From Vitrella brassicaformis CCMP3155 (lineage: Eukaryota; Protista; Chromerida), in NCBI GenBank assembly GCA_001179505.1, contig CDMY01000130.1:62001-126000 (forward strand): DNA of 64,000 bases, given 5' to 3'. Of this stretch, positions 4,045-64,000 are shown piece after piece. Positions within the stretch are counted from its first letter, which is position 1. Each line of letters begins with the position of its first letter. Position numbers and translations under genes: made by a program. The notes below the pieces were generated by a model. It saw only the letters and a program-made list of their open reading frames with translations, did no database searches and had not been told where the DNA came from.

Positions 4045-5988
4045 TCACCGTTTCTGGCTGTACTCCCCCGCTGGGCTCAGCATCTTCCCAAAACGATGCC
4101 GATTGTCTAGGAATATAGATCGCCCGTCGCCACACCAGCCGTCGCCCACTCCCATGACCCGGAGTGCGTCCCGCTCCTTGTAATCACGCCTCACCATAAT
4201 GGATGAAGACCAGCACTTCACAGGCCACAGCCCCCGACGCTCGCCGGTGACCAACTTGTCGCGGTCCTCCCTGTGGTAGGAGCCCTTAAACATGCCTTCT
4301 CGCCAATTTGGCCGGAAACAGGCCTTGTCGACCCCAAAGTTGGCTTGGTCACCGTCGGTCACGCCCAACGGTACCACTGAAGGCAGGTCGTCTTGCACAA
4401 GCTGCTGAACGAGGTCGTGTTGTTGAACGACAAAATCGTTCTCGATAAGTAACAGATGCGACGCCTTGACCTGACGCATGATACGAAACGCTCGTTTGTG
4501 GGCCTCTTTGCCGCGGGATGTCTCTCTGTGCTCGTGAACTGCCGCAAATCTCAGCTTGAAGTTCTCGTCAAGCCGCAGATCGCAGGACGGGCCGCTCGAC
4601 ACAAAAAGGTCCGTCCTGCCATGGTCCACCTCCATCGCCATCAAGCCCTCGACGAACTCCCAGCTGCTGTTGCCGGTCGGGTGCGCACAAATCACCGCCA
4701 GGACCATCTTCGGCTGTTGATAAGGCGATGTGTCCCTCTCGTACCAGACTGAGCCCTCTTCATTCGTCCATGCCCCAGCCTCCAAGAGCACCAAGTGATA
4801 GAAGAGGTCTTTCCCGTGTCCGTTCCCATGCAACAGTGCTGCGGCCTCCTTGCCGTCAGTGCGGGCGAAGGTCAGTCCATGCACATCCCTCTCTCCATCT
4901 CGCGAGCGATAAGTGGTCGGCGCGAGCTTCCACTCGTCCGGATCCATGCGCGTGAGCGCCTGGAAGAGCGGACGCTCATAGTCCAGCTTAATCGTCACCC
5001 CATGACCAACGTCATTCTTCAGAAACCGACGAGTGAAGAACAGCTGATCGTCCTGCCCGGATGGATACTTCTCCAGACAGAGGGATAGAGCACCCGCACG
5101 ACCTGCATACCCGCCGGAGTTGAGGAATCGGTACGCGTCTTTGGTCGGCGGCATGGGATATTCGTCCTTGAGGCGCCGGTCGGGCCATAATCCGAGCTCG
5201 CTGTCGATATGTGGCCATGGGCAGGAGACAGAAGGCAGACAGACAGACAAGGACACACGTAGATATGTGTGGGCTGTCTGCGTGACTGGTGACTTAAGTG
5301 CCTCACCTGGAGACGATGATGGTCGTGTTGTCATTGTCAGGTATGAGCAGACGCAGACGTCGCTCCAGCTCTTCATTTGGCACCCGCAGGACCCCGTCAT
5401 ACCTGCAGCGGGTGAGAGATCAAGCAAGGGGCTCTTGCTCAGCAACTGTTTTCCACACCCACCCATCAGTGAAGACGACCAACAAATCTGGATCCTGCTG
5501 GGACAGCCATCGCCTCATGACCTCAAGCTTGATTGTTCTGGGGTCGCCTTTGCGTTTCTTCTCGTTCTGTCCGATGGTCACTAGGTCCACACCGTAATAC
5601 CTTGCTGTGAGAAGGACAAAACACACAAATCAACAGACAGAATGACGTGCTGAGACTTTCCCTCCCACCTGATCGCGACAACGCTCTATAGCCCGGGTTC
5701 GTTTGATTTTGCCCCACTGTGACGAGAACGAAGGGCGGAAGAGACCCGTCGGCTGATGATAGCGCCACCTGCAGGACATGTGCACGTGCATAAATGTGCA
5801 CTGCACTCAGCGCAGCTCACTTGTTGTTGGTCCGCTGCATCGGTCCCTGACGGACAACTGACGATGCCTCTCAGCTGAGAGGTCAGCCATCCCCGCCGAC
5901 TGACAGACAGACCGACCAGAAAGGAGATGAGGAACACGCTCAGCGACGCTGCGGCGAAAAGGAAGAGGTGACGAAAGACGCGCGACAT
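4045..5988 (-). CDS. PLOD/procollagen lysyl-hydroxylase-like glycosyltransferase: N-terminal membrane anchor + GT domain + accessory domain, no hydroxylase domain
   Basis: Spliced product contains FVLVTVGQ, VVFTDG|YDGVL (DxxD), SELGLWPD, YRFLNSGGYAGRA and DDQLFFT, then HLLLIENDFVV...ANFG...GLWPV...IFLDNRHRFGKML. These parallel the PLOD GT and accessory domains. Hydrophobic anchor FLFAAASLSVFLISFLVGLSV. Double TGA stop at ~4042-4047. Confidence 0.8.
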
Positions 5989-6129
5989 CCTGAAGAGGGA
6001 ACGAATTACGCCGTTCCGGAAAGAAGGGGGGACACGGCGAGGCGAGAGTGTTCCATGCTGGCAGGCCAATCCCCTGAGTTTGCGCTAACGGCTGTACTGT
6101 AAATTCTGTTTCGGATGAACACCTGAGGA

Positions 6130-6304
6130 TGACGCTCATGCCGACGATGAGCACCGACGTCGTGGACTTCAGTTACGCAGCACTGGAGGGCGCGTCACTG
6201 GAGCGATGGCTTCCGTCGACTTTCGGGCGATGTAGGAAGAAATCACGCTGACAGTGCGGAGAAACGAATCCAACACAGACAACTTACAGGTGATTCATCA
6301 CTGC

Positions 6305-6336
<32 letters not shown>

Positions 6337-7545
6337 CTGTTGCCCCTGCTCTCTCCAGCCGTTCAATGCAGGACTCACTTACTGTGGCTGTGAGGATGGG
6401 CCCTTTTCGTTCGGAGCGCTGGATCAATCGTTACGTCCGCAAGCTCGAGAAATGCGTCCTCGTCAAGGAAGTCGTGCTTGACACGTGGGTGCCGCCCGGC
6501 CAGTCCATCGATGACTTCCGAGGGGTGCTGCAAGAGCAACTAACAGGGCTCAGCGTCAGCGTCGTAGAATTCATGGCCCGTATGACAGGCTCTCGCCTCA
6601 CGGCTGTGGCTATCCTGACTGCGTCCCCCCCCACTGGTCAGCGCACGCCTTCCCCTCCGCGTCGGCGGCAGTGAAGGCGCTCAGGTGCGATGGACTGTCG
6701 GGAACACGACGCTCCATATATCGGGACTGACAAAACACGAAAAGGACAAGGTACGGCAGGCACATGCAGGGGCGTCGCGTGGATGTATGGACGTGTACTT
6801 CCGTATGCGACAGGAATGGGGAGTGCCGCGATGTGCCGCAGGGGACAGCTTGCCCGACACTGCTCTCCTCAAAGCAGACGAAAACAACTGGGAGTGGGTT
6901 GGCGGAAGAGGTGACAGCCACTGAAATTTCATGAACACTGTGGCCTGACCCACATAATTGCTTCTTGATGTGGGTTTTGGCAGCAAACGCGATCAAGGCA
7001 ATATGGAGCGAGAAGATTTTGTCCGAACCCGCGAGGTCACCGTCACCAGCTTCTCCAAAGTCGATGCCACTCCCGAGCAAGAGTTGGGAGACATCTACGA
7101 ACGCTTCAAGGACACAAGAGGCACACATACACGGCAGGCACGCACGCGGACGAGTAAGAGAACAGGCAACGGACGGGATGAGTGCATTGGTGAATGTGAT
7201 GTCTCCGTTTGTGTGTCGTCAAAAACAGAGGAGGAGACGGGGAGTGGGTCTCAGGAGGAGCGAGACATACGACGCACTGGGCCTCTAGGCAAGGAACTGT
7301 ATGCGGGCCTGCACGGCAGCGAGGCTGAGGACAGCCCTTCCCTCTACGTCGGAACAAATCAATTCCTCTATCACGTAAGCACACAAACATGCGCTTCACG
7401 ACCCGCAGCTGCGCTCCTGTGCTGTCACGCGTCCTGTCGGCCGTTGTGTCAGACGATGATCGTGGCGCAGGCACTCCAGCGGAAGGCCAATGCACTGGCA
7501 AAGAAAAGTGATGGCAGGGCGAGATTGTGGCCCTCAAGGCTCTAG
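6130..7545 (+). CDS. Hypothetical spliced gene or gene fragments; structure unresolved
   Basis: Protein-like exon segments (RSERWINRYVRKLEKCVLVKEVVLDTW; VRTREVTVTSFSKVD; ELYAGLHGSE) flanked by GT/AG sites, but I could not build one continuous frame. Confidence 0.3.
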
Positions 7546-8377
7546 AAGTGAAGATGGTGAATCGGCTGGATCGGGCCTTGCGTTAGCTAAGACATAGACG
7601 GGTGCTTGTAGAGAGTGCTGATGGCTTCCAAGCCGTCAGTCACATTTTCTGCCTGCAGACATTTTCATATGCATGGCCTTTTAACTTGTATTTTGGCGCC
7701 ATCGTGAGGCTTCGCAATGGTCTTTGGTGTCTGTGCTTGGTGATGTCAATGGTGATGTCGCAAGGGTCTTTGCTGTCGGCTCGTGCCGGTGGTTGGAGAG
7801 AGACAAACGAGTGCGTGTGCGTGTGTGTATGTGTGTTGGGGGGGAATACGTGTGGGGCTGTCTACCGGTCAGTGGGCTCCAAAAACACAGCGAGCCGCAG
7901 ACAGGTCGGCGGGCATACATGCGTGACGGAAAAAGAGACGTGACGATGATGCATGGTGTAAGGGCAGAGCGAGAAGCACAGTGCGTGCACAAAGATGCCT
8001 TTATGCTGGTTCGAGTGATGATGACAGGAGAGACAAATCGAGGGCTGTGTCCAGTAGATGCTGTGTGGCGGCTTTCTCATTCTCATTGTGTGATTGGCTG
8101 GCTCTCCTGTCTCTAATTCTTCTACGTGGGGGTGGCCCTGTGTCTCGTCTGTGTGTGGTGAGTGAGCGAGTGAGGAGGTAGGTTTTCGATGAATGCCGGC
8201 CGAGACTCGAGAGGCACGTGGATTGCTTCATGCATGACACACCCGTGTACAGCTTGGTCCGCCCATTCTCCCTCCCGTCAGTCAGCCATGGCAGCCAACC
8301 GACGAGTAATAGCATGTACATGCGAATGACTTGCTTGTCGGTATTTCCACGTGTATTCAGGATAGAATCAATATCAG

Positions 8378-8830
8378 CTAACGCTGTGATCGGAAGAGCA
8401 GGACGGTCTTTTCTGCTGGAATGACATCGAAGAACGCTATCCACTTGGCGTCATACGTGATGGACATGCTGCAAACAACACAACAACACGGAAACGCCAT
8501 CGAGACCACCCAGAAAAAGGTTACAGATGTGCACTCCATCCTGTCTGCAGTGCAGTGATGTCTGTCATGCAAGTCTGTCCGTGCGTACCCGAAGCTTTTG
8601 CCGACGATGCATTGCCACGCGCCCTTGCCGCCCGTGTTGAACGCCAGGTCCTCGTCACACCTTTTCTTGATGGCGGTGGCGATGTCCTTCTCCAGCTTGT
8701 GGGCCTCCATGGCCTCATGGGCGTAAACCTGAGCCTGGTGGAGCAGCTCAGCTGGGAGGTCGCAGTACCGGATGCTCATGGGCGGCAGAAGGACTTTCTT
8801 CTCCGTCTCCTCCTCATCAATGTCCGACAT
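8378..8830 (-). CDS. Dynein light chain, LC8/type 1 family (2 exons)
   Basis: IRYCDLPAELLHQAQ...LEKDIATAIKKRCD...AWQCIVGKSFG|CMSITYD...VLLFRSQR* matches the DLC1 WxCIVGxxFG pattern. Confidence 0.9.
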   Translation of the reverse strand: MSDIDEEETEKKVLLPPMSIRYCDLPAELLHQAQVYAHEAMEAHKLEKDIATAIKKRCDEDLAFNTGGKGAWQCIVGKSFGYARTDLHDRHHCTADRMECTSVTFFWVVSMAFPCCCVVCSMSITYDAKWIAFFDVIPAEKTVLLFRSQR

Positions 8831-8980: not shown

Positions 8981-11900
8981 ATGTACGAACCTTTGGGCGG
9001 CGGCCCCGGTATGGCGACGCCAGGGACCGCAGACATCCAGTTGGGGCAGCTTGCCGGTGCCCGCTATGACATCTGCCTGGTCTTCCCATACAAGACCTCC
9101 AGCCGCGTCAAATACGGCGAGCATTCCGACCCCGTGCTGAATGACCCCAGCAGCAGGGAGCGGCGGCAGATGGAGCGGTGGGACAAGAAGCGCAGCAGCG
9201 TCCTCAAACAGCTCGTCAACTGCGGACTGGAGGTCAAGCCCTTCTACTCGAGGGACAAAGATGAGGTCTTCTGCAAAATCGGTACACTCATATAGCGGTT
9301 GGGGAGATGGATGGATGGATGGATGACATGAAAGTGCATATGTGATGGATGTCATGGGTGTCGCTGATGTGTTGTGTTGTGTTGTGTGTGTGTGTGGTGG
9401 ATGCAGGAACTGACATAGCCAAGTTGCAGGAGGTGGCTGAGATGACCAAGCACAAGCTGCAGATGAAGGAGGAGTACCTGGGGGCCCACGCACCGTACAT
9501 CAAGGACTTCCCCGGCAGGCCGGACGTCAACTACGCCGACCGCAAGGTCGTTTCACACGTGTACAAGCCACGCGACGATGAGGACTTCCCTACCGCCGAC
9601 TCGATCTTCAGGTCAGGCAGGGAGGGGGGGAGGGGGGGAGAGTGGGAGGGACGACACGCATTAAGGCGGATACATCATGCGCGCGCTTGTTGTCTGTGGG
9701 TGGTTGTGTCAGGACTGCTGATCGCATTCAGTTGCTGGACCACGTGATCCGCTCCAAGGACAAGGGGTGCGCGGGAGTCGGTAAGCAGGGCGCCTAGGCA
9801 CAGACAGACGGAGAGGTGTGTATGGATGCTTTGATGGATGGATGGATGGATGGTGGTTGTGTGTGGGTGCGCTGCAGATATCGGTGCGTTGGTCAAGACG
9901 GGCGACCTGAAGGCGTATTTCCCGCTGCATGAGAACAAGAAGCTGGATGAGCTCGACAGCACCTGGTGGAGCTGCTTCGTCACTGCCGCTAATGCTAACA
10001 AGGTCAGGCTCCTCGTCTGCCCATGGATGGATGGATGGATGGATCGTGTGCGCGACCCGCCTCACATCTGTGTGGCGCATTGTTTTGCCTGTCTTTGTCC
10101 GTCAGGTTCGCGACTACTTTGGTGAGCGCATCGGGTTCTACTTCTCGTGGAACGCGCACTTCAGCAAATGGCTCTTCATGGCCACACTCATCGCCGCCAT
10201 ATTCATCATCGGTAGGTAACACCCCCCAGGCACCACACCAACTCGCATCGGTGGATACGCTTATGGATGAATGCTGTGGTGTCTTGTATGTCAGCTGACG
10301 TTGGGGCGGGCACGCCTGACAACACGCTCGCCCCCATTTTCTGCATCATCATGGTCACTCACCCACCCATTCACGCACTCGATGGATGGATGGATGGACG
10401 GATGGATGGGTGCCTTTAGGCGTTGTGGTCGATCCTGTTCACGCACTACTGGCGGCGCAAGGCCCACAGCTATGCGTTGGAGTGGGGGGTTTTCGACCTG
10501 GAGCCCGAGCTCGAGGCGCCCCGGCCGGAGTTCTTCGGCACATACCGCATCAATCCAATCACCGAGAAACAAGACCTATACTACCCCTGGACGGTAGGGT
10601 ACACGACAAAGCCACCCTTTTTGTGGATGGAATGGCGTGTGGCGTGAGTGTGTGTGTGGTCGTCCATTAGTCGCGGGTGTTGTCGGTGCTGCTGAGTTAT
10701 GCGGTGATAACTGTGACGCTGGTTGCGATGCTGATAGTCATGGCGACGGTGTTTGTGTTCCGCCACCTCTACCACCACGAAGTGCCCTTTGGACGCATCA
10801 CATTCATGCTGCTCCTCGCCGTCGTCGTGGACGCACTCAACGTACGCCGCCCACCTACCAGCCACCTGTGTCGATGACACCGTGCACCTGTCTGCACCTG
10901 TGTGTGTGTGTGTGTGTGTGCAGTCCATCTTTTCGTGGGTGGTCAAGATTCTCAACGACCGCGAGAACTACCGCACGCAGACCGACTACGAGGCAAGAAC
11001 CGCTCCACACAAAAAAAACTGTGGACATTCCTTTCTCTCTGTCTCTCCCTCTGTTGGCAGAACGCGCTGTTAGCCAAGACGGTTGTCTTCAAGTTCGTCA
11101 ACTCGTACGCCGCCCTCTACTACATCGCCTTCTTCAAAGACCACTCCACCACATTCGGTCGGGAACACCCATACCTTGTCATGCAGACGCACAGACGCAC
11201 CAACGCATGGATGCATGTATTGTGGGTGCTGGTGGTGCGGGTCGTCAGGTCTGACGATGCACTGCGCGCGTGGCGACTGCATGATTGACCTGTCGTGGCA
11301 GCTGGCGGCGTTCTTCCTCTACAGACTCATCGCCTCCAACTTCATCGAGGTATGCAACAATGCGGGCTGTGCAGGGAATGGGTGCGGGTGGGTGGATGCA
11401 TGTATAATGTGTGCAGTTGTTGTGGCCCAAGGTGGTGTATCTGCTCAAGAGCTGGATGGAGCGACGCGCCTTCAAGGGGTCCAGAGGGGCAGTGCTACAG
11501 GTACCCACACCAACATGCACGTCACATCCAGCAAGCCAATGAGAGGCTTTTACGGTGTGATGTGGTGTGATGCCAATGACAGGATATGTCCCAGTCTGAG
11601 CAGCAGTGCAAGAAAGAGTCCTACAATCCATTCGATGACTTCGACGAAAGTCAGCCAAGACATCTTGTACACACACACATGAAGACGCATCTCATTCTCT
11701 CTCTCGTAACCATTCAGTGGTGGTACAGTTCGGCTATTGCAGTCTGTTTGTGGTCGCCACCCCCTGGATATTGCCACTCGTAAGAAAGGCCACCCGCACG
11801 GAAACCGATGGACGCATCAACACATCTGCATGACATGCGGCTCTTCCTGTCTGCCTGTGTGCTTGTGTGTGTGGCCAGGCTGTGTTGGCCAACGTGGTTG

Positions 11901-12726
11901 AGTGTTGGGTGGACAAGAACAAGCTCATCCACCACATGAGGCGACCCATGCCTCTCAAAGCCAAAGACAACGGTCAGCCGGCACCCATGCGGCACAGCCA
12001 CACGCACAGTGCACACCCACTCACTACACAGCGCCGTGTGTTTCTCATGATGCATATGTGTGTATGAGCAGGCAGTTGGGATATGTGTTTCGAGGTGATG
12101 GGCTTCCTGGCCGTCTTCACTAACGCAGCGCTCGTCGTCTTCACCACAGGCACGCTCTCTTAAGATCAGAGGACACATAAGAGTCCCGTTGGTGTATGAG
12201 TGCACCATGCTGCTTGTATGTGGTGTTTTCTTCAGAGGTGTTCCTTGGCGCGTCGCTGCTCATCAAGTTGCTGTGGTTCTTAGCTATTGAGGTGAGTGAG
12301 CAATGGGAAGATGGTCAGGTGCTGCACACAAACATGTCCGCCATGCGTGTATGTGTGCAGCACCTGGTCATTCTGGCGCGCATTGTGATGCACGTCATCC
12401 ATCCCGAGGTGCCCGAGTACGTGCGCATCCTCAACCTCAAACACAAGTATGTGGCGATTGCACGCCCGAGGGCATATGCAACCAGGCCCCTTCATACTGT
12501 ATGTGTGTATGTATGTGTGTGCAGGCACATCGTTCACAAGCATGTGGACTGTGTGGACGAGGAGGATGAGACAATGCGGGCACACGCACTGCAAGACAGA
12601 GAGGTAAGCCACGTCACACTGCCCGCGAACCCGTCCATCCATTTGTGTCTGTTTTTCGGCCTGGCTGGGGTGATTGGTCAGTTGAAGGTCGCCATCCTCG
12701 ACGTTGACGATGATGACGACGACTGA
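8981..12726 (+). CDS. Anoctamin/TMEM16 family Ca2+-activated chloride channel or scramblase (many exons)
   Basis: YFPLHE, VRDYFGERIGFYFSW, ENYRTQTDYE|NALLAKTVVFKFVNSY, YNPFDDFDE|MVVQFGY, NVVECWVD...RRPMP, FLAVFTNA and EHLVILARI...PEVP are hallmark anoctamin motifs. Confidence 0.95.
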
Positions 12727-12944
12727 AGATAGATACAGACAGAGATACGAATGCATACATACCTCTAGGCAGGCACACGTGCGTAGATTGGGCGAGGGAG
12801 AGGATGTCTAGCTAGGTGCCTTGATTGATCGAGGCAGCCGGCCGGGGAAGGAGGGAGGGATGGGGTGTACAGCGGATGGAGGGAGTCACGGGCCGACCGA
12901 CGGATAGACGCCTCGCTTGCATGACCTGCGTAGATCCCCATCAC

Positions 12945-13015
12945 ATACATACACACATACATACACATATGTACATACATAGATATATACATACGTACGC
13001 ATACGTTCATGTACA
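12945..13015. repeat. (CATA/TACA)n microsatellite tract
   Basis: Visible degenerate tandem tetramers downstream of the anoctamin gene. Confidence 0.7.
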
Positions 13016-13490
13016 TAGTCTTGCTGGCCTCTGATCTCCCGTTTTCATCTTAGCGCATCATGTGTGTCTCGCTCCTCTCTTGGCGTTGGTTTTCCCGTAC
13101 AGACAGCGGTTTTCCATCCATCCATGTATGTGAGCAGGGACGATGGTGCTTAGTGAGTGAGTGGACCCATGCGTGTGCTTCCATAAATGAGTGAATGTCT
13201 CGTATGTGACGTTGATTGTCTGTCCGCGGACTGATCGAGGCTGCTGAGCATTGTTCGACGATTGCTGGTCCTCTGCCAAGGCTAAAGCCTACACTCGCTA
13301 CGTTGTTGTTACGTTGCCTCCTGCCAGCTCTTTTTCGACGATTCGGCGGCAGAGATAAGGCCAAGTAGGCGACTCGAGCGAAAAAAGGAAAAATGACCGA
13401 CTGCTTCTGTCGGTTGTGAGCCTGGAGCGCTAATTCCTGGTGTGTTCTATGGGTTTCTAGTGTGTCTCAGTTGTCCTTGGCGCCTGTATT

Positions 13491-14769
13491 TCAGGGCACG
13501 GCGTGGATAATCGTGCCGAGAAACGCGCAGACAAGGCCAACAACGCCTGCGACGCGACGCCACGACACAACGCAACAAGGTGTCAGTATAGTGTGTGGGC
13601 TCATTCATTCATGTGGATACTGACCGAGGATGGATGAGTAGCCCATTGGACACTTTATGTCATCTTCGCCGTCCGTGCAGCTGATTTGGTCATCATCCGT
13701 GCCCTCGGACGTCATGGCGCCCCACACGACCAGACCTGCACACGGCACGCACATTCGTGTCTCTCTGCCTCGGTGTTCTGGTGGATGTGCCGACCGAGAA
13801 AGATGAAGAGCAGCGAAGCGCCCCACGCAGCGAGGCCAGGAATGTACCACTTCTTGTCCTGGAAGGAAAGTGCGCTGAGCGAGAAATGAACACACACACA
13901 CACACACACAGAGACGGGGAGAGAGACACACACATCTGTGTTCGCGGGCACTTATCGAGGCTAAAGAAGCAGGAGGACCTGAAGGCCATTCCGGCGAGAA
14001 GCGCTACCATGCCAAGGGCACCGAAGACAATCATGACGAGGCCAGAAGCGATGGCTTTATCGATCATGGTACAAGTGTCCTAGCCACACAAGGAGGAAAG
14101 GGCAGCAAGGATACTTCCTGTCATGTAATGTCTCTTCACCTCCATTGCGTCCTTGCACTCGCCACCGTCCTTGGATTCGAAATGCTCTTTGTACTTGGCG
14201 TGTGCTGTCCTGAACGAATACAGGAGGCAGGCAGGCAGGCAAGCAGGCAGGTAGGCAGGCATTCATTCATCAGCATCTCGTGCTTCTGCGACTACATACC
14301 TGCAGGCGCAATAGTCAGTGCCGTCACGGGTCATGTCGCCGCACTTGGTATCGTAATCCTCGAAAAGCTTCTCCCTGTCCCCGCATTTGCCGTTGGCGGC
14401 CTCGCCATTCGAGGACGTCTCATATGCATCCACCGAATGCGTCAGCCCGAAGGACTGAATCTTCTTGTACTTGGGGGTCTTGTTGTCGTACATGGACTCC
14501 CTCCATGAGTCCGTTGCCATACCTGCAGCGATAAAAACGAAAGGCGGCCGGTCGGAAAAGCAACAAAGAGTACACAACCGCGGCTGTGTGCCGGCAGCCT
14601 CACCGGCGATAAGCAAGGCGAGAGCACATAGGCCTGCAAAGAGCAAATCAAGAAGAGAAAAGGCACGTCCCTCCTCCCCATCGTCCCTCTTACCGAAGCC
14701 GGCTGCCACGAGTTTGAGCACCCTCGTAGGGGATGAGCTCTTGTGCTCAACAGGGTTGGTGGGAGTCAT
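13491..14769 (-). CDS. Claudin/PMP22-like tetraspan membrane protein, paralogue 1
   Basis: TM1 (LLFAGLCALALLIAG), then MATDSW...SFGLTH...Cys-rich loop, TM2 (LVMIVFGALGMVALLAG), TM3 (IPGLAAWGASLLFIFLGLVVWG), CPMGYSSIL, TM4 (GVVGLVCAFLGTIIHAVP*). The claudin-family assignment is an inference from topology and the W...GL...C-C pattern. Confidence 0.7.
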
Positions 14770-56969: not shown

Positions 56970-57542
56970 CAGGGATGTTCAGAAATAGCAACGCCGTGAA
57001 ACTCATCTGGTGGGATGTATGCCATGTTCGTACTTTGGATGTACGCACAGCTCAGTGTCGACCCCTTCACTATCCGTGTGGGGCGACACTGACCGAGTTG
57101 CCGACAGCCGGCCACACCACATGTACACACACAATGACACGCACCAAACACAGAGGACGACCGAATTCCCACAAGCGACAAATATGCCTGCCTACTAGAC
57201 GTGTGCACCGTCTGTCTACTTTGTCTCCTTCGTCTCCTTCCAGCGGTCCATCTGTACAGCCACCTACGCGAGCCCTCTTGCAAAGACACACCAACACGTT
57301 CACACATGCATATGTGGATACCAACGATCGTGGGAAAGGAACAAAAAGAAAAAGGAACGACAACGAATGAGACAAAGCGATTGCGTGCACAGGACGGGTG
57401 GTCCCCGGCCCTCTCATGTTAGCGCTATACATACATACACAGAACTAACTTTTACGTAGATGTTTGTCTCGTCTGTCTCTCTGTCCGCCCCACATCTGCT
57501 GTGTTTTCGGGCGGACAAATTGCCAGTCTGTCTGTCTCTCTC

Positions 57543-57571
<29 letters not shown>

Positions 57572-57576
<5 letters not shown>

Positions 57577-60500
57577 GATCCACTCCATTGTCTTGAGCAG
57601 AAAGGAAGGCCACCGGCGTGTCCCTTTCACTGCGTCCTTCATGCGATGGCTTTTTGGATGGGAACTTATGGATGCCGTCATGGTCGTACACCCGCACCTC
57701 GAAGATCAGAGCCTCGTGCGCCCCATTGGTTGCCAAGACCATGATGCGGACGGCCTTGACGCCCTCTCCCTTTGGGTCGACCTTAGCAAGGGCATGGCGG
57801 ACGTCGTGCACCCTCTTGCGCTGGTAGTTGTCCCGTATCTCGGCCACTGTGTGCCACTCGTCCAGTGTGTGGCTGGGAGAGTCACCATCAGTACCAGCAA
57901 GCAGCACCTGGAGGTTGTAGTGACTGACGGTCTCTGGCTGTGGCTCGCCCCAGACCATCTTCTCCCATCGGCCTTTGTGCAGCGATAAGGTGAGCTCCCG
58001 GTGCATGCCTGTGTCAAAGACCAGCTCAATCTGCACACACGTGAGAGAGACGAGACACATCGACCGACCAATGAGTCCGTCTGCTGTAATTGATGCATAG
58101 AAACCAACGTAGTACCAGTGAGAGGTTGCGTATTGGCTGGTCCCACTCGAGCACCAGCCATGCCGGCACACTCTTGGAGATCCATCGGTTGACGCCATCG
58201 AGGCGCTGCCCCGGAGCCGCACCCAAGTAGCCATGCACTGCACGATTCTGGCCAGAAATCACCTGCATGGCATGAGTGGCCGACGCACATAGGATATGCA
58301 CACATTCACACATTCACATCTCCAGACATCCAATCGAACGAACAAGGCCGGCACGTGAGACTTTCGCTTTACCTCTTTGGCGATTCCGCTGGCATTCTCT
58401 GACGACGCGTAGATGTGTGCACGGCGGGCGTAGTCCTGCGCACACAAACAATAGGGAGGGCAGCAGCAATGCATATGCATGTCTGTGTGTATTGGGTACT
58501 CACCCTGGGGTCTTCATTGTACATTCCTATGATGTACTGGTCGTCACGCAGCAGCTGCTGCTGAATGCTCCACACAGCATCTGCAGGGACGGAAACCACG
58601 AATGGTGAAAGGCCACGCAAATGAATGCACATGTCTCAATGTCTGACCTTTGTCGTCTGCAAGCTGGTGGGGCTGCACGTCATGTAGAGCGCAGTAAGCA
58701 GCAGCAGTGCCCGTGGCCTGGCCCATCGCAGCGCAGGTCTTCATCACACGCTGGCTGCCAAACACCACATGCGAGAACGACGCAAGCCTCCCGGCAAACA
58801 TCAAATTGGTCGCATTCAGAGCCACTAGAGATCGCAGAGGAGTGCTGCATACATACATACACACACACACGAGCGCACACACACGCAGCCATGCGCGATG
58901 AGACGCAGGAAACACCACACACAAGTGAGCGAATGCATGGGCTGTACAGGCAGGTGACCTACCTGTAAATATAAGGGAGGCGATGCCCTACAAACGCGGG
59001 GACGGACGTATCGAGAACACCCTTGACGGCGTGTAGGTCAATATTCCATCCACCATGGGACACACGGTCCCAGAAAAGGGCAGGGGGACGGGACTTGTCC
59101 ACATCTGATGAAAGCAGGTATGTATCAGTCCACCCGTCAACGTCTCCCTGTCTCGCCACTTACCTGGCAGGATGTCGTGCTGCGTCATGACGTATTGGCC
59201 TTGGAAGAGGCGACCTGAGAGCAAACAGGCGGACAGATCGACACTCGTACATGTGTCGCGCCCACGTATGTATGTCGCCAGCGTACCTTGCCGTTTGCAT
59301 GGCCACCACTCGAGCCACTCGATGGCCAGGTTGTCGGCCTCAGGGTAGTTGCCGCTGTTTTTGATGTAGTCCCACACGCCCATGACGACCTCCATGAGTT
59401 TGTCCCTTATCTCCTCATTCTCGTGGATGGTGTGGAACGGCCACGCCACCTCGATCCACCAGTAGCCGTACTCCAGGTCGTTGATTCCCCTGTAACGGAA
59501 ATCCTCCTTGGTGTACCGAATCGCCCTGCATGACATGAGGCACACCACACATGAAGCAAAGCGAGATGCCAGAGTAAGTGCACCACGTGTCTGTCGTATT
59601 CGGCTGACCATGATGGAGGGGTGAAGGGCATCTTGTGTGGGTGCTCCCTGGCGACGAAGGCCAGGCTGCTGCCCATGGTCTCCCCGTCCTCCTTGGGCAG
59701 CGCAAGGGACTCATTATACTGGTGCGACGACTCACGACCTGCAAACAAACAAGAAGGCACATGCATTCGAGACGTGAGCGACTTATTCCCATTCTTTCTC
59801 ACCGATAATGTGCGGCACTTCCGCCTCGGCGCCCAATCTCCCATCGCCCGTCGCATCGATGAAGACCTTGCCCTTGATCAAATAGCGAATCTGAGAAAGG
59901 CAAGGATCGTGCCATTTTGGACGACAAGCACTTTTCCGAACGTATGCACCTGAGTTTCCTGGTTCTCTGCAATGATCTCTGTCACGGTCTTTGCCGGCGT
60001 CTTTGTGGCGCCGACTACCCAGGTGTTGAGCTGAGAAGAAACAGACAGGCAAGAAGAGCGCCGGTTCCGTATCTATAGATGTGCAGCAGCTTTTGTCGCA
60101 CACGTACCAGCAGCTGACAGTTGGGCCCACTGGTCCGGAAGTAGTCGTAGAGGAAGAGGTCATGCATGCTGTGGCTTCGCTGGCCGTTCTTGACGGCATT
60201 CATGAGCGTGTATTCCTCAACAATCCCGCCCTCCCGTGTTTCTGTCGCCCTGTGTCTGCCGCGGACACCTGATCGATCAGCCACACCGTTTCAATGCAAT
60301 GCGTGTGTAGACCAGCGACCCTGTCAACGTGTGTGTCTTTGGTCTGTGGGGGGTACGTACCGTGAAGGTCAGCACCGACCATGTGCAGCTTGGACTCAGA
60401 CGACGCATTCCCGCCAAGCACACCCCTGATCACCGCACCCACCGCGGTCACTTGCTCGCTCACAAACACGACGTTGCCTGGCCTGCCCCGTACGGTACCT

Positions 60501-60863
60501 GCTCTGAACGAGGATGGTCTTGGCGCCGCTCCTGCAAGAGGCCAGCGCGGCATTCGTTCCGGCGCTGCCTCCACCCGCCACCACCACTTCAGCCTCCAAG
60601 TACTTTGTCACCAAACCGCCACCGACGGGCTCATCTGCACCCACAGCCAAGGATTGTGACAGCCCGGCTGACGTTGATTGAGTCATCCGTGTTTCTTTCT
60701 TACTGTTTCTTGGCTTGTCGTCTGGCTCCAGTGTGAGTAGATTTTCCGCTTCGGCAGCTGACCTGGCTCCCTCCTCCTGTTCGGCGACTTCCGCCCTTGC
60801 CATCGTCAAACATGACGCCAGAAACGCGGCTGCGATCCATCCACACAAGAAACGAGGCCTCAT
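57572..60863 (-). CDS. Secreted bacterial-type FAD-dependent oxidoreductase (FAD_oxidored/PF12831-like) with a C-terminal discoidin/F5-8-like domain, about 14 exons
   Basis: Signal [34 protein letters not shown] (Rossmann), [49 protein letters not shown], and C-terminal FDTGMHREL...PQPETV...NYQR...ATNG...IFEVRVY. Confidence 0.88.
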
Positions 60864-61094
60864 GACAGCGAGAACTAAGAAGGCTTAGATCAGGTTGTGT
60901 GTTTCGACGCACGGCTCGCAAGTCAAAAACTCGCGCTAACGGCAGGGCACCTCGTACGTAAACTTGCCGTGCACCGGTGGTGATGCGGTGCACACTCCGG
61001 TAATGCTGCTCTCCGTAGTCTTGTCGTTTCCTTGTCTTGCCCTTATCCCGCTTCATCGTTGACGGCGACTGTCCGCCGCACCTCCATTGACTCG

Positions 61095-63759
61095 ATGAGG
61101 GTCCCTCTCGTTGCTTGCGGCATGCTGCTCGCCCTGGCAACGACTGCCGAAGCATCACCTAACAGAGGTGGGGTAGGGTCCCACGAAAGCATCTGCCGTC
61201 ATGTGCATGACCTGACTCACCCACGTTTTGTGTCTTTGTTTGGTGTGTTGGTTGGTCGTGTGCTGCTGTGCTGCCTCCAGAGGAGGCAGAGGAAAGGGAC
61301 AGGTGCTGCGTCGACTGCCAGCTGTTCGACCTGCAGTGCTGGGCCTGCCATATCTTGGACATCTTCGATCGGACCTGCAGCGGGGATGAGTGGGCTACTG
61401 AGGGGAGCTTGGACGAGGCGGCCTTCATGGCGGCATCGGCCGAAGCTGATGTCCACGCTTTGGCCACTCAATCCGTCCTCTCGGTCATGGACTCGCCTTC
61501 CATCCCGGACTGGTCAGCCTATGTCGTGACGCTGTCTGTGGATAAGTCGGGCCGTCTGCGGTATGCTGTGGATTCACGCGACCCTTCTGCTCCGGTCATG
61601 CTGCCTTCAGCTCTCGGCATCTCGGTGGACGGCCATGATCTGGGCGTTGATGTGGAGCTGGTCGACAAGGAGGAGCGGCCAGTGGAGGAGAGCTATGTGA
61701 CACGTGGCAAGCACAACTTGGCTGAGGCCAAGTACAACGATGTCTCGTTCACGTTTCGCCATCGTCCGTCGGATCGTCTCTGGCACCTCGACTTCCGCCT
61801 CTTCCCTGACGGGCTTGCCTTCCGCTACTCTCTGCCCGCCACAGATGCGGCAAGTCAATCGACGGTCAATGGTGAGGCGTCGCATTTCTCCTTCCGCTTC
61901 ATGGACGACGACGACGCGCCCACCGACGACCACCACCACGCTTGGTTTTTCCAACGTGACAGACTCAGCAACTATGAGCTGAGGACATATGCTGGCGTCT
62001 TTCAGAGTGCCCCTGCCAGCTCCCTTGCCTCTCGACCGAAGGGCAACGGCCCGCCGAACAGATATGGTGCCCCGCTGCTGTTCCACGATGTCTCAGAGGC
62101 TGGCGCTTTCCCCTATCGGCTGCTGACGGAAGCTGCTCTGTACGAGTACCCAGGGATGCGCTTTCTCGCCCTTCCAGACGGCAGGACATTCGCCGCCGAC
62201 CTGGCCGACGAAGAAGTCACTCTATCGCTGCCCTTCAAAAGTCCGTGGCGCGTCATCTTGCTTGCCCGCACGCTCGACGACCTGATCAACAACAACGTCA
62301 TCACGTCGCTGAACCCGCCCCCCGACCCCGCCCTTTTCCCCTCTCCCCCGCTCTACGCGAGGCCCGGCCGCTCCGTGTGGCGGTGGTGGCGCCACGGGAC
62401 AGGCACGCCAGTCCAGGAGATTCAGTACATTGACAAAGCGGCTGAGCTCGGCTTCGAGTATACGACCATCGACGAAGGCTGGGCTGACTGGCCGGACAAG
62501 TGGGCAACGATGGAGGATATGTGCGAATATGGGCGGGAGAAGGGCGTCGGGGTCGTGCTGTGGAAGGACTGTGCTGAGGTGGAGAACCCGGAGAATGACT
62601 ACAATGACCTTCGGAAGTTCCTCGACAATGTCAAGGCCACGGGAGCAGTGGGCGTCAAGTTCGACTTCTTCAACAGGTAGGGAAGATCGCACATCTAGGA
62701 CAATGCCTATTGATGATCGCGAGAGTGATCATTTCTGTGTTCCGTTTTGCAGTGAGAGCATTTTTCGAGTCCGTCTGCAAACGAAAATCCTCACAGAGGC
62801 CGCAAAGCGGTGAGTAAAAACAAGCATGAGGGATCAGGGCTGTGAACGTGATTGTGCCATGATGCAGGCAGCTCTTCATCAATTTCCATGGCATACAGGT
62901 GACGACAGGCACAAGAGAATACGCCAAGCTGCACAGTAGAATACTTGTTTTGTCTTCTGTATCCGTAATTCTCAGAAGCCCACTGGCGAATGGAGGAGCT
63001 TTCCCAACGAGCTGACGCGGGAGGCCGTGTGGGGCTTAGAGATCAACAAGATGTCGGACAACTACCCACCGATCGAGCCATCGCACAATGCCGCGCTGCC
63101 ATGGGCGAGATTCGTGCTGGGTGCGGCCGACTACACACCGCTCGCACTCGCCAAAAATCGGCGAGGGCCCACCACAGTGGTGAGGGAGAGAGAAAGAAAT
63201 GGGCCACCAAGGCAGGCGCTGGGACGATGCATGTGCTTTGGTCTGTGCGTTGCCTTTCCTTCTGTCTGTCTGTCTGTCTGTCTGTCTTCAGGTGCATCAG
63301 GTTGCCCTGCTGGTGTTGTTTGACTCGCCCCTTCAAACAATCGCCGAGGACCCTTTCTACATCCTCGACCCCAACAAGCCACACGCGGCCGCACTGGACG
63401 TCATCAAGGCCATCCCCACCACATGGCAGCGCACACGCGCCGTGGCCCCCAGCAGCATCGGCCGCCTGGCCGTCATGGCACGCAAAACCAACGAAGGAGA
63501 CGTCTGGTTTTTGGCGGCCATCAACGGCCTCAGCGAGACGCAGACCGACATAGAGATTCCGGTGGACTTCCTGGACAGTGACAAGGTGTACGATATGGTG
63601 ATGGTCTACACTGTCGAGACAGGGGGGGTGGGGGAGGGGCAATCGGTGATGCGGGAAGAGCGCAGGTGGGACGTTGGGCAGCGGGGGGCACTCAAGGGTG
63701 TGCGGTTACTGGCGGGGGATGGGATCGTTGTCATGTGGAGTCCTGTTGGTGGCAGCTGA
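61095..63759 (+). CDS. Secreted glycoside hydrolase family 97 (alpha-glycosidase, retaining-type motif)
   Basis: Signal MRVPLVACGMLLALATTAEA. GH97_N motifs FRLFPDGLAFRY and KSPWRVIL; barrel motifs RPGRSVWRWW, YIDKAAELGFEYTTIDEGW, GVKFDFF, INFHG, PNELTREAVWGLE and FVLGAADYTP; C-terminal IPTTW...AR...WFLAAING. Confidence 0.93.
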
Positions 63760-64000
63760 GTGGTCAGTGTGCAAGGCCAGTTTTAGCTAGTGCACTTCTT
63801 GGTTGTAATGAATGGACACTTAGGGAGGCGTCCTTGGCTGGCACGCACTCGCTTTGTCGTTCATTCATTGTCATTGGTGTCGCTGTCATTCATTGGTCTT
63901 GCTTTGGCTGTCGTTTTTCGCGATGGATGGTAGGTCGGCATTTATTCATGTCTGCGTTGCTGTGTCTTTGCGATAAGGCTCGTGTGGCTGCGTGGCACAT

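What the first reader, a model, noticed from the sequence alone, without database searches (positions are those of the whole stretch)
57572..63759. Head-to-head pair of bacterial-type secreted enzymes (FAD oxidoreductase + GH97): a PUL-like module in a eukaryote
Seen: the two ATGs (60863 on minus, 61095 on plus) are only 231 bp apart, both proteins carry signal peptides, and both genes have spliceosomal introns, so they are integrated in the host genome. Known: GH97 (SusB/BT1871 family) is chiefly bacterial. From recollection, this FAD-oxidoreductase type with a discoidin-like tail is also mostly bacterial, often lies near glycoside hydrolases, and has no function I can name. Inference: a co-acquired or co-selected, co-regulated pair that oxidises and hydrolyses a glycan or glycoside, i.e. 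a two-gene eukaryotic analogue of a polysaccharide utilisation locus.
Basis: partly seen in the sequence, partly recalled or inferred. Interest (0 to 1): 0.72.

Follow-up and report, generated by a model that had tools for sequence, protein, structure and literature searches.

The report
Divergent GH97–flavoprotein gene pair in Vitrella
In the coral-associated alga Vitrella brassicaformis, a sugar-cleaving GH97 enzyme gene of bacterial origin and a flavoprotein gene with a sugar-binding tail lie head to head and are both expressed; they came from different sources, yet related genes also cluster in many bacteria, which hints at, but does not prove, a shared job.

Summary
The window is Vitrella brassicaformis CCMP3155. 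A 15-exon PF12831 FAD-flavoprotein gene (minus strand) and a 6-exon GH97 gene (plus strand) start 231 bp apart. Both N-termini look like signal peptides by eye. Spliced RNA contigs from three runs cover both genes, and their 5' ends lie about 55 bp apart.

Co-acquisition is not supported. The Vitrella GH97 genes form one clade nested among bacterial GH97s, and no other eukaryote appears among the best hits. The flavoprotein belongs to a eukaryote-wide clade (foraminifera, choanoflagellates, sponges, Artemidia). Its bacterial sister group (~613 aa) had no GH97 nearby in the three contexts read. Only this contig carries both families (at least 13 GH97 loci, 6 flavoprotein loci), and three other eukaryotic flavoprotein loci have no GH97.

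A functional link gained unexpected support. In 25 of the 80 nearest bacterial GH97 loci, from six phyla, a paralogous ~760-aa flavoprotein lies within 10 kb, often adjacent. That flavoprotein is otherwise rare, and it sits beside a sodium:solute symporter in 19 of 20 further loci.

The pair therefore looks secondarily assembled and possibly co-regulated. The flavoprotein's chemistry is unknown.

Earlier follow-ups of this scan had already reported bacterial-origin GH97 genes elsewhere in this genome.

The parts
57572..60908 (-). FAD-flavoprotein gene (public model P0108, 711 aa). CDS runs from ATG 60863 to the stop at 57572-57574. It has 15 exons, coordinates within about 3 nt: 60704-60863, 60498-60634, 60359-60424, 60108-60266, 59950-60030, 59801-59890, 59608-59736, 59285-59524, 59164-59212, 58963-59104, 58648-58844, 58503-58580, 58371-58434, 58116-58260, 57572-58030.
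   Evidence: Pfam PF12831 1e-71 on P0108. Spliced RNA contigs give the listed joints, and transcript contigs end at 60904-60908. Sequence read.
60558..60575 (-). Dinucleotide-binding motif GGGSAG (GxGxxG; G54, G56, G59 of P0108).
   Evidence: Invariant in the 62-sequence alignment A2. Codons read.
57680..58434 (-). C-terminal CBM32 / F5-8 type C-like beta-sandwich (P0108 residues about 488-676, across the last three exons).
   Evidence: AlphaFold model, pLDDT 89.8. VIA-align: 4zxe Z 17.5, rmsd 1.9 A over 129 residues; NanJ CBM32 2v72 Z 15.3.
60792..60863 (-). Predicted signal peptide of the flavoprotein, [24 protein letters not shown]. The public model omits it.
   Evidence: Translation of exon 1. 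RNA contigs reach 60904-60908. Paralogues and other eukaryotic members also begin with hydrophobic leaders. No signal-peptide predictor was run.
60909..60962 (.). Core of the shared upstream region, between the outermost ends of the two sets of transcript contigs. The ATG-to-ATG spacer is 60864-61094.
   Evidence: In three runs, FAD-gene contigs end at 60904-60908 and GH97 contigs begin at 60963-60973. Contig ends are only suggestive of transcription starts.
60963..63900 (+). GH97 gene (public model P0001, 733 aa). CDS runs from ATG 61095 to the stop at 63757-63759. It has 6 exons: 61095-61167, 61281-62676, 62753-62809, 62868-62898, 62976-63179, 63292-63759.
   Evidence: Pfam GH97_N, Glyco_hydro_97 and GH97_C. 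P0001 is 100% identical to exon 2. Spliced contigs. Sequence read.
61095..61154 (+). Predicted signal peptide of GH97, MRVPLVACGMLLALATTAEA. The public model starts at the internal Met at 61122.
   Evidence: The RNA contig starts at 60963. No predictor was run.
62657..62668 (+). K475-F-D477-F, the retaining-type nucleophile motif; the D477 codon is 62663-62665.
   Evidence: D477 is invariant in alignment A1. It aligns with the KVDF of BtGH97b 3a24. The motif rule is from PMC2670981.
63021..63041 (+). E526 (63021-63023) and E532 (63039-63041), the family-wide calcium ligand and acid catalyst glutamates. The H507-G508 'HG' motif lies in exon 4.
   Evidence: Invariant in A1. Their roles are described for BtGH97a in PMC2670981.

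Best explanation
This is a real, expressed, head-to-head pair of Vitrella nuclear genes for two proteins that probably enter the secretory pathway.

(1) The first is a calcium-dependent, retaining-type GH97 glycosidase of the alpha-galactosidase / beta-L-arabinopyranosidase kind. Its family entered the Vitrella lineage once from bacteria and then multiplied.

(2) The second is an uncharacterised PF12831 flavoprotein. It has a fumarate-reductase/KstD-like FAD fold and a C-terminal CBM32 sugar-binding module. It belongs to a clade of eukaryotic proteins, many with N-terminal hydrophobic leaders, found in foraminifera, choanoflagellates, sponges and Artemidia.

The two genes have separate histories and were brought together inside the Vitrella genome. 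They now share a spacer of about 55 bp between transcript ends (231 bp ATG to ATG) that probably acts as a bidirectional promoter.

Inferred, not shown: the adjacency is kept because the two enzymes act in one glycan-breakdown route. In that route the GH97 would remove a terminal alpha-linked sugar, and the flavoprotein would oxidise or reduce the glycan or the released sugar. This mirrors bacterial clusters in which the same GH97 subfamily sits beside a paralogous flavoprotein and its symporter.
For: - Gene identity and catalytic motifs.
- Splicing and expression of both genes in three runs, with transcript ends about 55 bp apart.
- GH97 tree: 8 Vitrella rows form one clade (SH-aLRT 100), nested in a bacterial subfamily. 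Vitrella is the only eukaryote among the best GH97 hits.
- Flavoprotein trees: the eukaryote clade has support 99 to 100/100, its sister is the ~613-aa bacterial type, and the GH97-linked ~760-aa type lies outside. Joining the eukaryote clade with the 760-aa type is rejected (p-AU 0.011).
- Bacterial association: 25 of 80 GH97 loci carry the 760-aa flavoprotein within 10 kb. They come from Bacteroidota, Verrucomicrobiota, Planctomycetota, Lentisphaerota, Calditrichota and Pseudomonadota, plus one divergent Paenibacillus case; 7 are directly adjacent.
- Background rate: that flavoprotein occurs in 0 of 120 other sampled Bacteroidota genomes and in 26 of 151 Sphingobacteriaceae.
- Active-site-region residues are invariant across all three flavoprotein clades.
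- Chance: with at least 13 GH97 and 6 flavoprotein loci among roughly 23,000 genes (gene count from memory), about 0.007 immediate GH97-flavoprotein adjacencies are expected.
Against: - No experiment or expression series links the two genes. Contig depths cannot show co-regulation.
- The Vitrella flavoprotein is not an orthologue of the GH97-linked bacterial subfamily. Its closest bacterial relatives had no GH97 nearby in the three contexts read.
- Seen from the flavoprotein side, GH97 is only an occasional partner in bacteria (1 of 20 loci). The constant partner is a symporter that Vitrella does not have nearby.
- The bacterial flavoproteins lack signal peptides and are presumably cytoplasmic, whereas the Vitrella one probably enters the secretory pathway. 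The roles may therefore differ.
- Neither the nearest GH97 paralogue (70% identical) nor the nearest flavoprotein paralogue (72%) is paired.
- A genome with hundreds of carbohydrate-enzyme genes will have some chance neighbours, and this pair was picked out after the fact.
Confidence: 0.5

Rival explanations
1. Chance neighbours. Two multi-copy families of secreted carbohydrate-active enzymes happen to lie head to head in a compact genome where short divergent spacers are common. No functional or regulatory coupling exists.
For: - The pair is unique in the genome and is not duplicated with either gene's nearest paralogue.
- It is not conserved at other eukaryotic flavoprotein loci.
- The Vitrella flavoprotein belongs to a different subfamily from the GH97-linked bacterial one.
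- No other component of the bacterial clusters lies nearby.
- Neighbours of the other flavoprotein paralogues are unrelated genes.
Against: - About 0.007 such adjacencies are expected for these two families specifically.
- Independent bacterial data show that exactly these two families are associated far above background.
- Both genes are expressed in the same three RNA data sets.
Confidence: 0.4
2. One reading: the two genes were co-acquired as neighbours from one bacterial donor (a fragment of a polysaccharide utilisation locus) and have stayed together since.
For: - Bacterial loci with GH97 and a PF12831 flavoprotein directly adjacent exist in several phyla.
- In Paenibacillus methanolicus (L031) a divergent flavoprotein lies 75 bp from a GH97 of the clade near Vitrella's. 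In the full tree that flavoprotein branches next to the (613-aa type + eukaryote) group.
Against: - The flavoprotein is in a strongly supported eukaryote clade shared with foraminifera, choanoflagellates and sponges. No GH97 of this subfamily from those groups was among the best hits.
- Union with the GH97-linked clade is rejected (p-AU 0.011).
- The L031 flavoprotein sits on a very long branch (2.11), so its placement is unsure.
- In bacteria the two genes nearly always share a strand, whereas here they diverge.
Confidence: 0.05
3. Bacterial contamination or misassembly: the two genes are not part of the Vitrella nuclear genome.
For: Both families are common in bacteria.
Against: - 14 + 5 GT-AG introns, removed in RNA contigs of three runs.
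- The genes lie inside a 184,631-bp contig with ordinary eukaryotic genes.
- GC content matches the rest of the window.
- Multiple intron-bearing paralogues exist on other contigs.
Confidence: 0.01

Closest known systems
BtGH97b (BT1871), retaining alpha-galactosidase of Bacteroides thetaiotaomicron (PDB 3a24, 5e1q)
   Same: Three-domain GH97 architecture. Nucleophile Asp in a K-x-D-F motif, an HG motif, and the two family-wide glutamates.
   Different: The relationship is distant (phmmer E 5.7e-32, mostly over the catalytic half). The NCBIfam 'retaining alpha-galactosidase' model scores 154.6 bits against a cut-off of 800, so the substrate is not established. The Vitrella protein has introns, a eukaryotic-style leader and a Cys-rich N-terminal extension.
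GH97 of PDB 5xfm (deposited as 'alpha-glucosidase'). From memory, this is the BT3661 beta-L-arabinopyranosidase/alpha-galactosidase.
   Same: It is the best solved relative of P0001 (E 8.5e-39, aligned over residues 125-660).
   Different: The alignment is weak, and the identity of the enzyme rests on my recollection. I did not check it in a paper.
Bacterial polysaccharide utilisation loci (SusC/SusD-type PULs)
   Same: The nearest bacterial GH97s lie in clusters with SusC/SusD, LacI, esterases, GH2, GH31-like proteins and the flavoprotein-symporter pair. The Vitrella pair keeps two of those families side by side.
   Different: Vitrella has no transporter, sensor or other cluster member nearby. 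The two genes have separate origins and diverge from one spacer instead of forming an operon.
Fumarate reductase / urocanate reductase / 3-ketosteroid dehydrogenase class of two-domain flavoproteins
   Same: The predicted fold of residues 40-480 matches them at Z 15-17 (1qo8, 6t85, 4c3x). A GxGxxG motif is present.
   Different: Sequence identity is only 12-20% with low TM-scores. No solved structure covers more than the Rossmann start by sequence. The CBM32 tail is not part of those enzymes, and the chemistry is unknown.
Eukaryotic metabolic gene pairs with bidirectional promoters, such as yeast GAL1-GAL10 (general knowledge)
   Same: Two enzymes of a possible common pathway are transcribed divergently from a short shared spacer.
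   Different: Here neither a shared pathway nor co-regulation has been shown.

Membership tests
Glycoside hydrolase family 97 | Three-domain architecture: N-terminal beta-sandwich, (beta/alpha)8 catalytic domain, C-terminal beta domain | tested here: met
   PF14508 2.3e-34, PF10566 3e-51 and PF14509 1.3e-09 on P0001, all above the curated cut-offs.
Glycoside hydrolase family 97 | Family-wide glutamates equivalent to BtGH97a Glu526 and Glu532 (calcium ligand and acid catalyst) | tested here: met
   E526 and E532 of P0001 are invariant in the 30-sequence alignment A1. Roles are from PMC2670981. The matching residue numbers are a coincidence.
GH97, retaining subgroup | (K/M)(I/V)DF motif with the nucleophile Asp, HG instead of HE, and no HHET base motif | tested here: met
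   K475-F-D477-F (F in place of I/V) and H507-G508. D477 aligns with the D of KVDF in 3a24. The rule is from PMC2670981. The HHET region was not examined column by column.
GH97, retaining subgroup | Measured alpha-galactosidase or beta-L-arabinopyranosidase activity with retention of configuration | not testable with these tools
   This needs recombinant enzyme and NMR or kinetics.
PF12831 FAD_oxidored flavoproteins | Full-length match to the family model, with an N-terminal GxGxxG dinucleotide-binding motif | tested here: met
   PF12831 1e-71 over residues 49-470 of P0108. G54, G56 and G59 are invariant.
PF12831 FAD_oxidored flavoproteins | Bound FAD and redox activity | not testable with these tools
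   Only the predicted fold was available. No member of this subfamily has a solved structure or an assigned reaction in the sources searched.
CBM32 / F5-8 type C domain | Beta-sandwich fold of the family | tested here: met
   Residues 488-676 match 4zxe (Z 17.5, rmsd 1.9 A, 129 residues), 2v72 (Z 15.3) and other CBM32 modules. The Pfam sequence models do not reach threshold on P0108; PF00754 and DUF7402 are seen on relatives.
Polysaccharide utilisation locus (PUL) | Co-located, co-regulated genes for binding and import (SusC/SusD or another transporter), sensing and degradation of one glycan | tested here: not met
   Only two enzyme genes are present. No transporter, regulator or further cluster member lies within the 64-kb window or beside the paralogues. 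Co-regulation was not tested.
Co-transferred gene pair (single horizontal transfer) | Both genes trace to the same donor clade, and their nearest homologues are neighbours there | tested here: not met
   GH97 nests among Paenibacillaceae, Chloroflexia and Verrucomicrobiota sequences. The flavoprotein sits in a eukaryote clade whose sister is the ~613-aa bacterial type, which had no GH97 nearby in the three contexts read. The AU test rejects union with the linked clade.

The most novel reading that the evidence does not exclude
Vitrella independently rebuilt, from a bacterial-derived GH97 and a eukaryote-lineage flavoprotein, the same two-family association that recurs in bacterial glycan loci. 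If selection keeps them together, this convergence would point to an undescribed flavin-dependent step in glycan breakdown. That step would be carried out by PF12831+CBM32 proteins: cytoplasmic and symporter-coupled in bacteria, and secreted in Vitrella, foraminifera, choanoflagellates and sponges.
Probability: 0.3. Interest if true: 0.7.

Novelty: new variant of a known kind. Interest (0 to 1): 0.5.

Why it matters
If the coupling is real, the pair gives a compact eukaryotic handle on a large, uncharacterised flavoprotein family. That family recurs in bacterial glycan-degradation clusters across several phyla and also has a clade in sponges, choanoflagellates and foraminifera, many with N-terminal hydrophobic leaders. 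It would also be an example of a eukaryote assembling a small catabolic gene pair from parts of different ancestry, rather than importing it whole. Even if the adjacency is chance, two results stand on their own as leads for carbohydrate enzymology: the bacterial flavoprotein-symporter module (adjacent in 19 of 20 loci, with variable glycosidase partners), and its enrichment beside one GH97 subfamily. I found no paper describing either.

Tried and rejected
- The search for related loci with the single protein P0001 found no relative in genome contigs. The alignment-based scan worked.
- The look-up of encoding contigs for P0001 found nothing; records of the window's own genome appear to be left out.
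- Paper searches gave nothing relevant: PF12831; GH97 with FAD oxidoreductase and PUL; GH97 with Vitrella; flavoprotein with symporter and GH31/GH2.
- Sequence search of solved structures with P0108 matched only the Rossmann start.
- NCBIfam gave only below-threshold hits.
- Foldseek gave generic flavoprotein matches with TM 0.2-0.27.
- The ESM Atlas returned only 'FAD-dependent oxidoreductase' clusters.
- The AU test on the full 81-row flavoprotein set did not finish in two runs. A 31-row set was used instead; its groups were named after the first tree had been seen.
- Homologues of the large no-Pfam proteins of the bacterial clusters were not found in Vitrella with these queries.
- No symporter, GH2, GH31-like protein or esterase of the bacterial clusters lies within 10 kb of any Vitrella flavoprotein paralogue or in the window.
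- The long ORFs beside the paralogues are unrelated, for example an RsmB-type methyltransferase and a PLOD-type glycosyltransferase domain.
- Contamination was considered and rejected on the splicing evidence.
- A protein-protein complex prediction was not run, because I make no binding claim.
- Exons were never joined by me. Spliced proteins were taken only as the database's own records (P0001, P0108), and exon searches were made by reference.

Full report
**Identity of the window**

The assembly has 72,700,666 bases in 1,064 contigs, and the window is contig C130:62001-126000. Exon 2 of the plus-strand gene is 100% identical to a protein of Vitrella brassicaformis CCMP3155 (P0001). The minus-strand gene matches another protein of the same organism (P0108). 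GC content is even across the window at 0.45-0.60.

**Anatomy**

- On the plus strand, Pfam finds GH97_N and the start of Glyco_hydro_97 in the long exon and GH97_C in the last exon. On P0001 all three domains pass their cut-offs.
- Reading the sequence together with the RNA contigs gives six GH97 exons: 61095-61167, 61281-62676, 62753-62809, 62868-62898, 62976-63179 and 63292-63759.
- On the minus strand, PF12831 FAD_oxidored matches three exon ORFs and residues 49-470 of P0108 (1e-71).
- The RNA joints give 15 exons from ATG 60863 to the stop at 57572.
- The two ATGs are separated by 231 bp.
- Both upstream ATGs open classical-looking signal peptides with AxA cleavage motifs. I judged this by eye, without a predictor. 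An acidic stretch follows each, not a plastid transit peptide.
- The public models start at internal methionines and so lack these leaders.

**Expression**

- Logan contigs of three runs (X1, X7, X8) carry spliced forms of both genes. A fourth run (X6) looks like unspliced DNA.
- The runs are only guessed to be RNA, but spliced contigs can hardly come from DNA.
- The flavoprotein-gene contigs end at 60904-60908 in three runs. The GH97 contigs begin at 60963 and 60973 in two runs. The transcript ends therefore lie about 55 bp apart and do not overlap.
- Contigs cannot prove transcription starts or expression levels, so this is only suggestive of one bidirectional promoter.

**What the GH97 is**

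- The best solved relatives are 5xfm (E 8.5e-39) and the retaining alpha-galactosidase BtGH97b, 3a24.
- Gloster et al. 2008 (PMC2670981) give sequence rules. Retaining members have (K/M)(I/V)DF and HG. Inverting members have K(T/S)GY, HE and HHET. Glu526 and Glu532 are conserved throughout the family.
- P0001 has K475-F-D477-F, H507-G508, E526 and E532, all invariant among its nearest relatives. It is therefore a retaining-type GH97.
- The NCBIfam alpha-galactosidase equivalog scores far below its cut-off, so the substrate is open.

**What the flavoprotein is**

- No solved structure matches beyond the Rossmann start by sequence.
- An AlphaFold model built on a 62-sequence alignment is confident (pLDDT 89.8, pTM 0.90).
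- Residues 40-480 resemble two-domain flavoproteins such as fumarate and urocanate reductases, sarcosine oxidase and 3-ketosteroid dehydrogenases (Z 15-17).
- Residues 488-676 are a CBM32 / F5-8 type C sandwich (Z 17.5, rmsd 1.9 A).
No source searched assigns a reaction to this subfamily.

**Copy number and uniqueness of the pair**

- Six-frame scans of the genome find GH97 on at least 13 contigs and this flavoprotein type on six: C130, C413, C454, C495, C564 and C942. Only C130 carries both.
- The nearest GH97 paralogue (C265:85500-90000, 70% identical) has no flavoprotein on its contig.
- The nearest flavoprotein paralogue (P0258 on C454, 72%) has no GH97 within 10 kb.

**Origin of the GH97**

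- In a 93-row tree, eight Vitrella sequences form one clade (SH-aLRT 100). This clade sits inside a bacterial subfamily next to Chloroflexia, Marinimicrobium/Verrucomicrobiota and Paenibacillaceae sequences.
- This was a quick search under LG+G4, and some Vitrella rows are single exons.
- In two database searches, the only eukaryotic proteins among the best hits are Vitrella's own.
- This agrees with earlier follow-ups of this scan on other contigs (s1-226978, s1-212092).

**Origin of the flavoprotein**

- Its nearest relatives are Vitrella paralogues, followed by proteins of:
  - the foraminifera Bolivina and Nonionella;
  - the choanoflagellates Microstomoeca and Hartaetosiga;
  - the sponges Oscarella and Sycon;
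  - Artemidia.
  These are 48-55% identical, ahead of bacteria at 46-51%.
- In an 81-row tree these eukaryotes form one clade (support 99). The sister group is a bacterial type of about 613 aa (Hydrogenedentes, Armatimonadetes, Phycisphaerae).
- The bacterial flavoproteins that lie beside GH97 are about 760 aa and form a separate clade (support 100) outside both.
- A careful 31-row tree gives 100/100 for the eukaryote clade. An AU test rejects joining it with the 760-aa clade (p 0.011). The groups were named after the first tree was seen.
- The three 613-aa contexts read have no GH97.
- Many eukaryotic members start with hydrophobic leaders, whereas the bacterial ones start directly with the FAD-binding motif.
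- The two Vitrella genes therefore have different histories, and co-acquisition is very unlikely.

**The bacterial association**

- I took the 80 bacterial loci that encode the closest GH97 relatives, with up to 10 kb on each side, and searched them with P0108.
- Twenty-five carry the ~760-aa flavoprotein. They come from Bacteroidota, Verrucomicrobiota, Planctomycetota, Lentisphaerota, Calditrichota and Pseudomonadota, plus a divergent Paenibacillus case. Seven are directly adjacent on the same strand.
- On the GH97 tree the linked loci are scattered through the 76-row subfamily and absent from the 12 more distant rows.
- As a control, the 760-aa type was found in none of 120 other evenly drawn Bacteroidota genomes and in 26 of 151 Sphingobacteriaceae. 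The enrichment beside this GH97 subfamily is therefore large.
- The association is asymmetric. Only 6 of those 151 genomes have the GH97 subfamily. In the three with the closest GH97 matches it lies adjacent to, or within about 15 kb of, the flavoprotein.
- In 20 loci chosen from the flavoprotein side, a sodium:solute symporter is adjacent in 19. The glycosidases vary: GH31-like 7, GH2 6, GH97 1.
- The bacterial core is thus flavoprotein plus symporter, with GH97 as one of several accessory enzymes. SusC/SusD, LacI, GDSL and SASA esterases and large proteins of 870-1,130 aa without clear Pfam matches also occur.
- Vitrella has none of those other parts nearby, and the large proteins were not found in its genome with these queries.

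**Weighing**

- Chance. For these two families, about 13 x 2 x 6 / 23,000 = 0.007 immediate adjacencies are expected; the gene number is from memory.
- Against that, the pair was selected after the fact from a genome rich in carbohydrate-enzyme genes, which weakens the estimate.
- The bacterial association is independent evidence that the two families work in related processes. However, it concerns a paralogous, cytoplasmic, symporter-coupled flavoprotein, not the probably secreted eukaryotic clade.
- Three other eukaryotic flavoprotein loci have no GH97: two unidentified eukaryote contigs and Oscarella.
- My odds: about 0.5 that the pair is a secondarily assembled, functionally related and probably co-regulated unit; 0.4 that it is a chance neighbourhood; 0.05 that it was co-transferred; about 0.01 that it is contamination.

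**Mechanism, marked by status**

- Shown: gene structures, splicing, presence of transcripts, domain content, retaining-type motifs, the predicted FAD fold with a CBM32 tail, separate phylogenetic histories, and the bacterial association.
- Inferred:
  - secretion of both proteins;
  - a shared bidirectional promoter;
  - GH97 removing terminal alpha-galactosyl or beta-L-arabinopyranosyl-type residues;
  - the flavoprotein binding a glycan through CBM32 and oxidising or reducing it, or the released sugar.
- The fumarate-reductase/KstD-like fold would suit chemistry next to a carboxylate or carbonyl, for example on uronates. That is speculation.

**Novelty**

- Bacterial-origin GH97 genes in Vitrella were already noted by this scan on other DNA.
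- I found no paper on GH97 in Vitrella, on this flavoprotein subfamily, or on its link to GH97 or to the symporter.
- I class the finding as a new variant of a known kind: a small eukaryotic enzyme-gene pair built from parts of different ancestry. Its interest is moderate and depends on experiments.

Noticed in passing
L059, L068, L072, L078, L079, L086 and L123-L142 (bacterial loci): A ~760-aa cytoplasmic PF12831+CBM32-like flavoprotein lies directly beside a sodium:solute symporter in 19 of 20 Sphingobacteriaceae loci and about 16 of the GH97-linked loci. The glycosidase partners vary (GH31-like, GH2, GH97, esterases). I found no description of this cluster type in the papers searched.
   Followed up: partly
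L097:2378-5002, 5006-8410, 11826-14603; L098:3804-6557, 12118-14748: Large proteins of 870-1,130 aa recur in these bacterial clusters. They are distant relatives of one another (22-28% identity) and give only faint GH127/GH88-like Pfam hits. They may be undescribed glycosidases.
   Followed up: partly
L021 and L026 (about 9584-12931), L060:9881-14266, L039 (last ORF, 1,632 aa): Single ORFs appear to fuse cluster members: GH97 with a GDSL esterase (Didemnitutus), GH97 with one of the large proteins (Parapedobacter), and a large protein with a GH31-like domain (Calditrichaceae). ORF calling was mechanical, so some may be read-through of adjacent genes.
   Followed up: no
window 61290-61390 (+): Right after the signal peptide, the Vitrella GH97 has a cysteine-rich stretch (CCVDCQLFDLQCWACH...TCSG, 7 Cys in about 30 residues). 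It lies upstream of the region that aligned to the bacterial relatives.
   Followed up: no
window 60792-60863 (-) and 61095-61121 (+): The public protein models P0108 and P0001 start at internal methionines and so lack the probable signal peptides. RNA contigs extend beyond the upstream ATGs.
   Followed up: yes
window 57535-57575 and 63262-63290: (GTCT)n / (AGAC)n microsatellites lie just past the flavoprotein stop codon and in the last GH97 intron. The read-laying tool skipped the second one, and another repeat at 58842-58887, as repeats.
   Followed up: no
P0110, P0273, P0274 (choanoflagellate and Artemidia proteins): Some eukaryotic members of the flavoprotein clade carry a ricin-B lectin domain, inserted in the C-terminal part in P0110. 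This is a second glycan-binding module.
   Followed up: no
L112 (Oscarella lobularis) and L104-L106 (Hydrogenedentes-type contigs): In Oscarella the flavoprotein gene lies between a pectate-lyase-superfamily (RHGA/epimerase-like) gene and a galactose-3-O-sulfotransferase gene. In the Hydrogenedentes-type contigs the ~613-aa flavoprotein is followed by a protein with 3-keto-disaccharide-hydrolase and BNR domains, and a GH106 rhamnosidase and rhamnose-type catabolic genes lie nearby.
   Followed up: no
L099 = G000:C265:85500-90000: The closest paralogue of this GH97 (70% identity over 405 residues) was not among the annotated Vitrella proteins returned by the database searches. It may be unannotated or modelled differently.
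   Followed up: no
L117:5994-8003 (-) = G000:C942: A 670-aa open frame with a PLOD-type glycosyltransferase domain lies beside one flavoprotein paralogue on a 9.4-kb contig.
   Followed up: no
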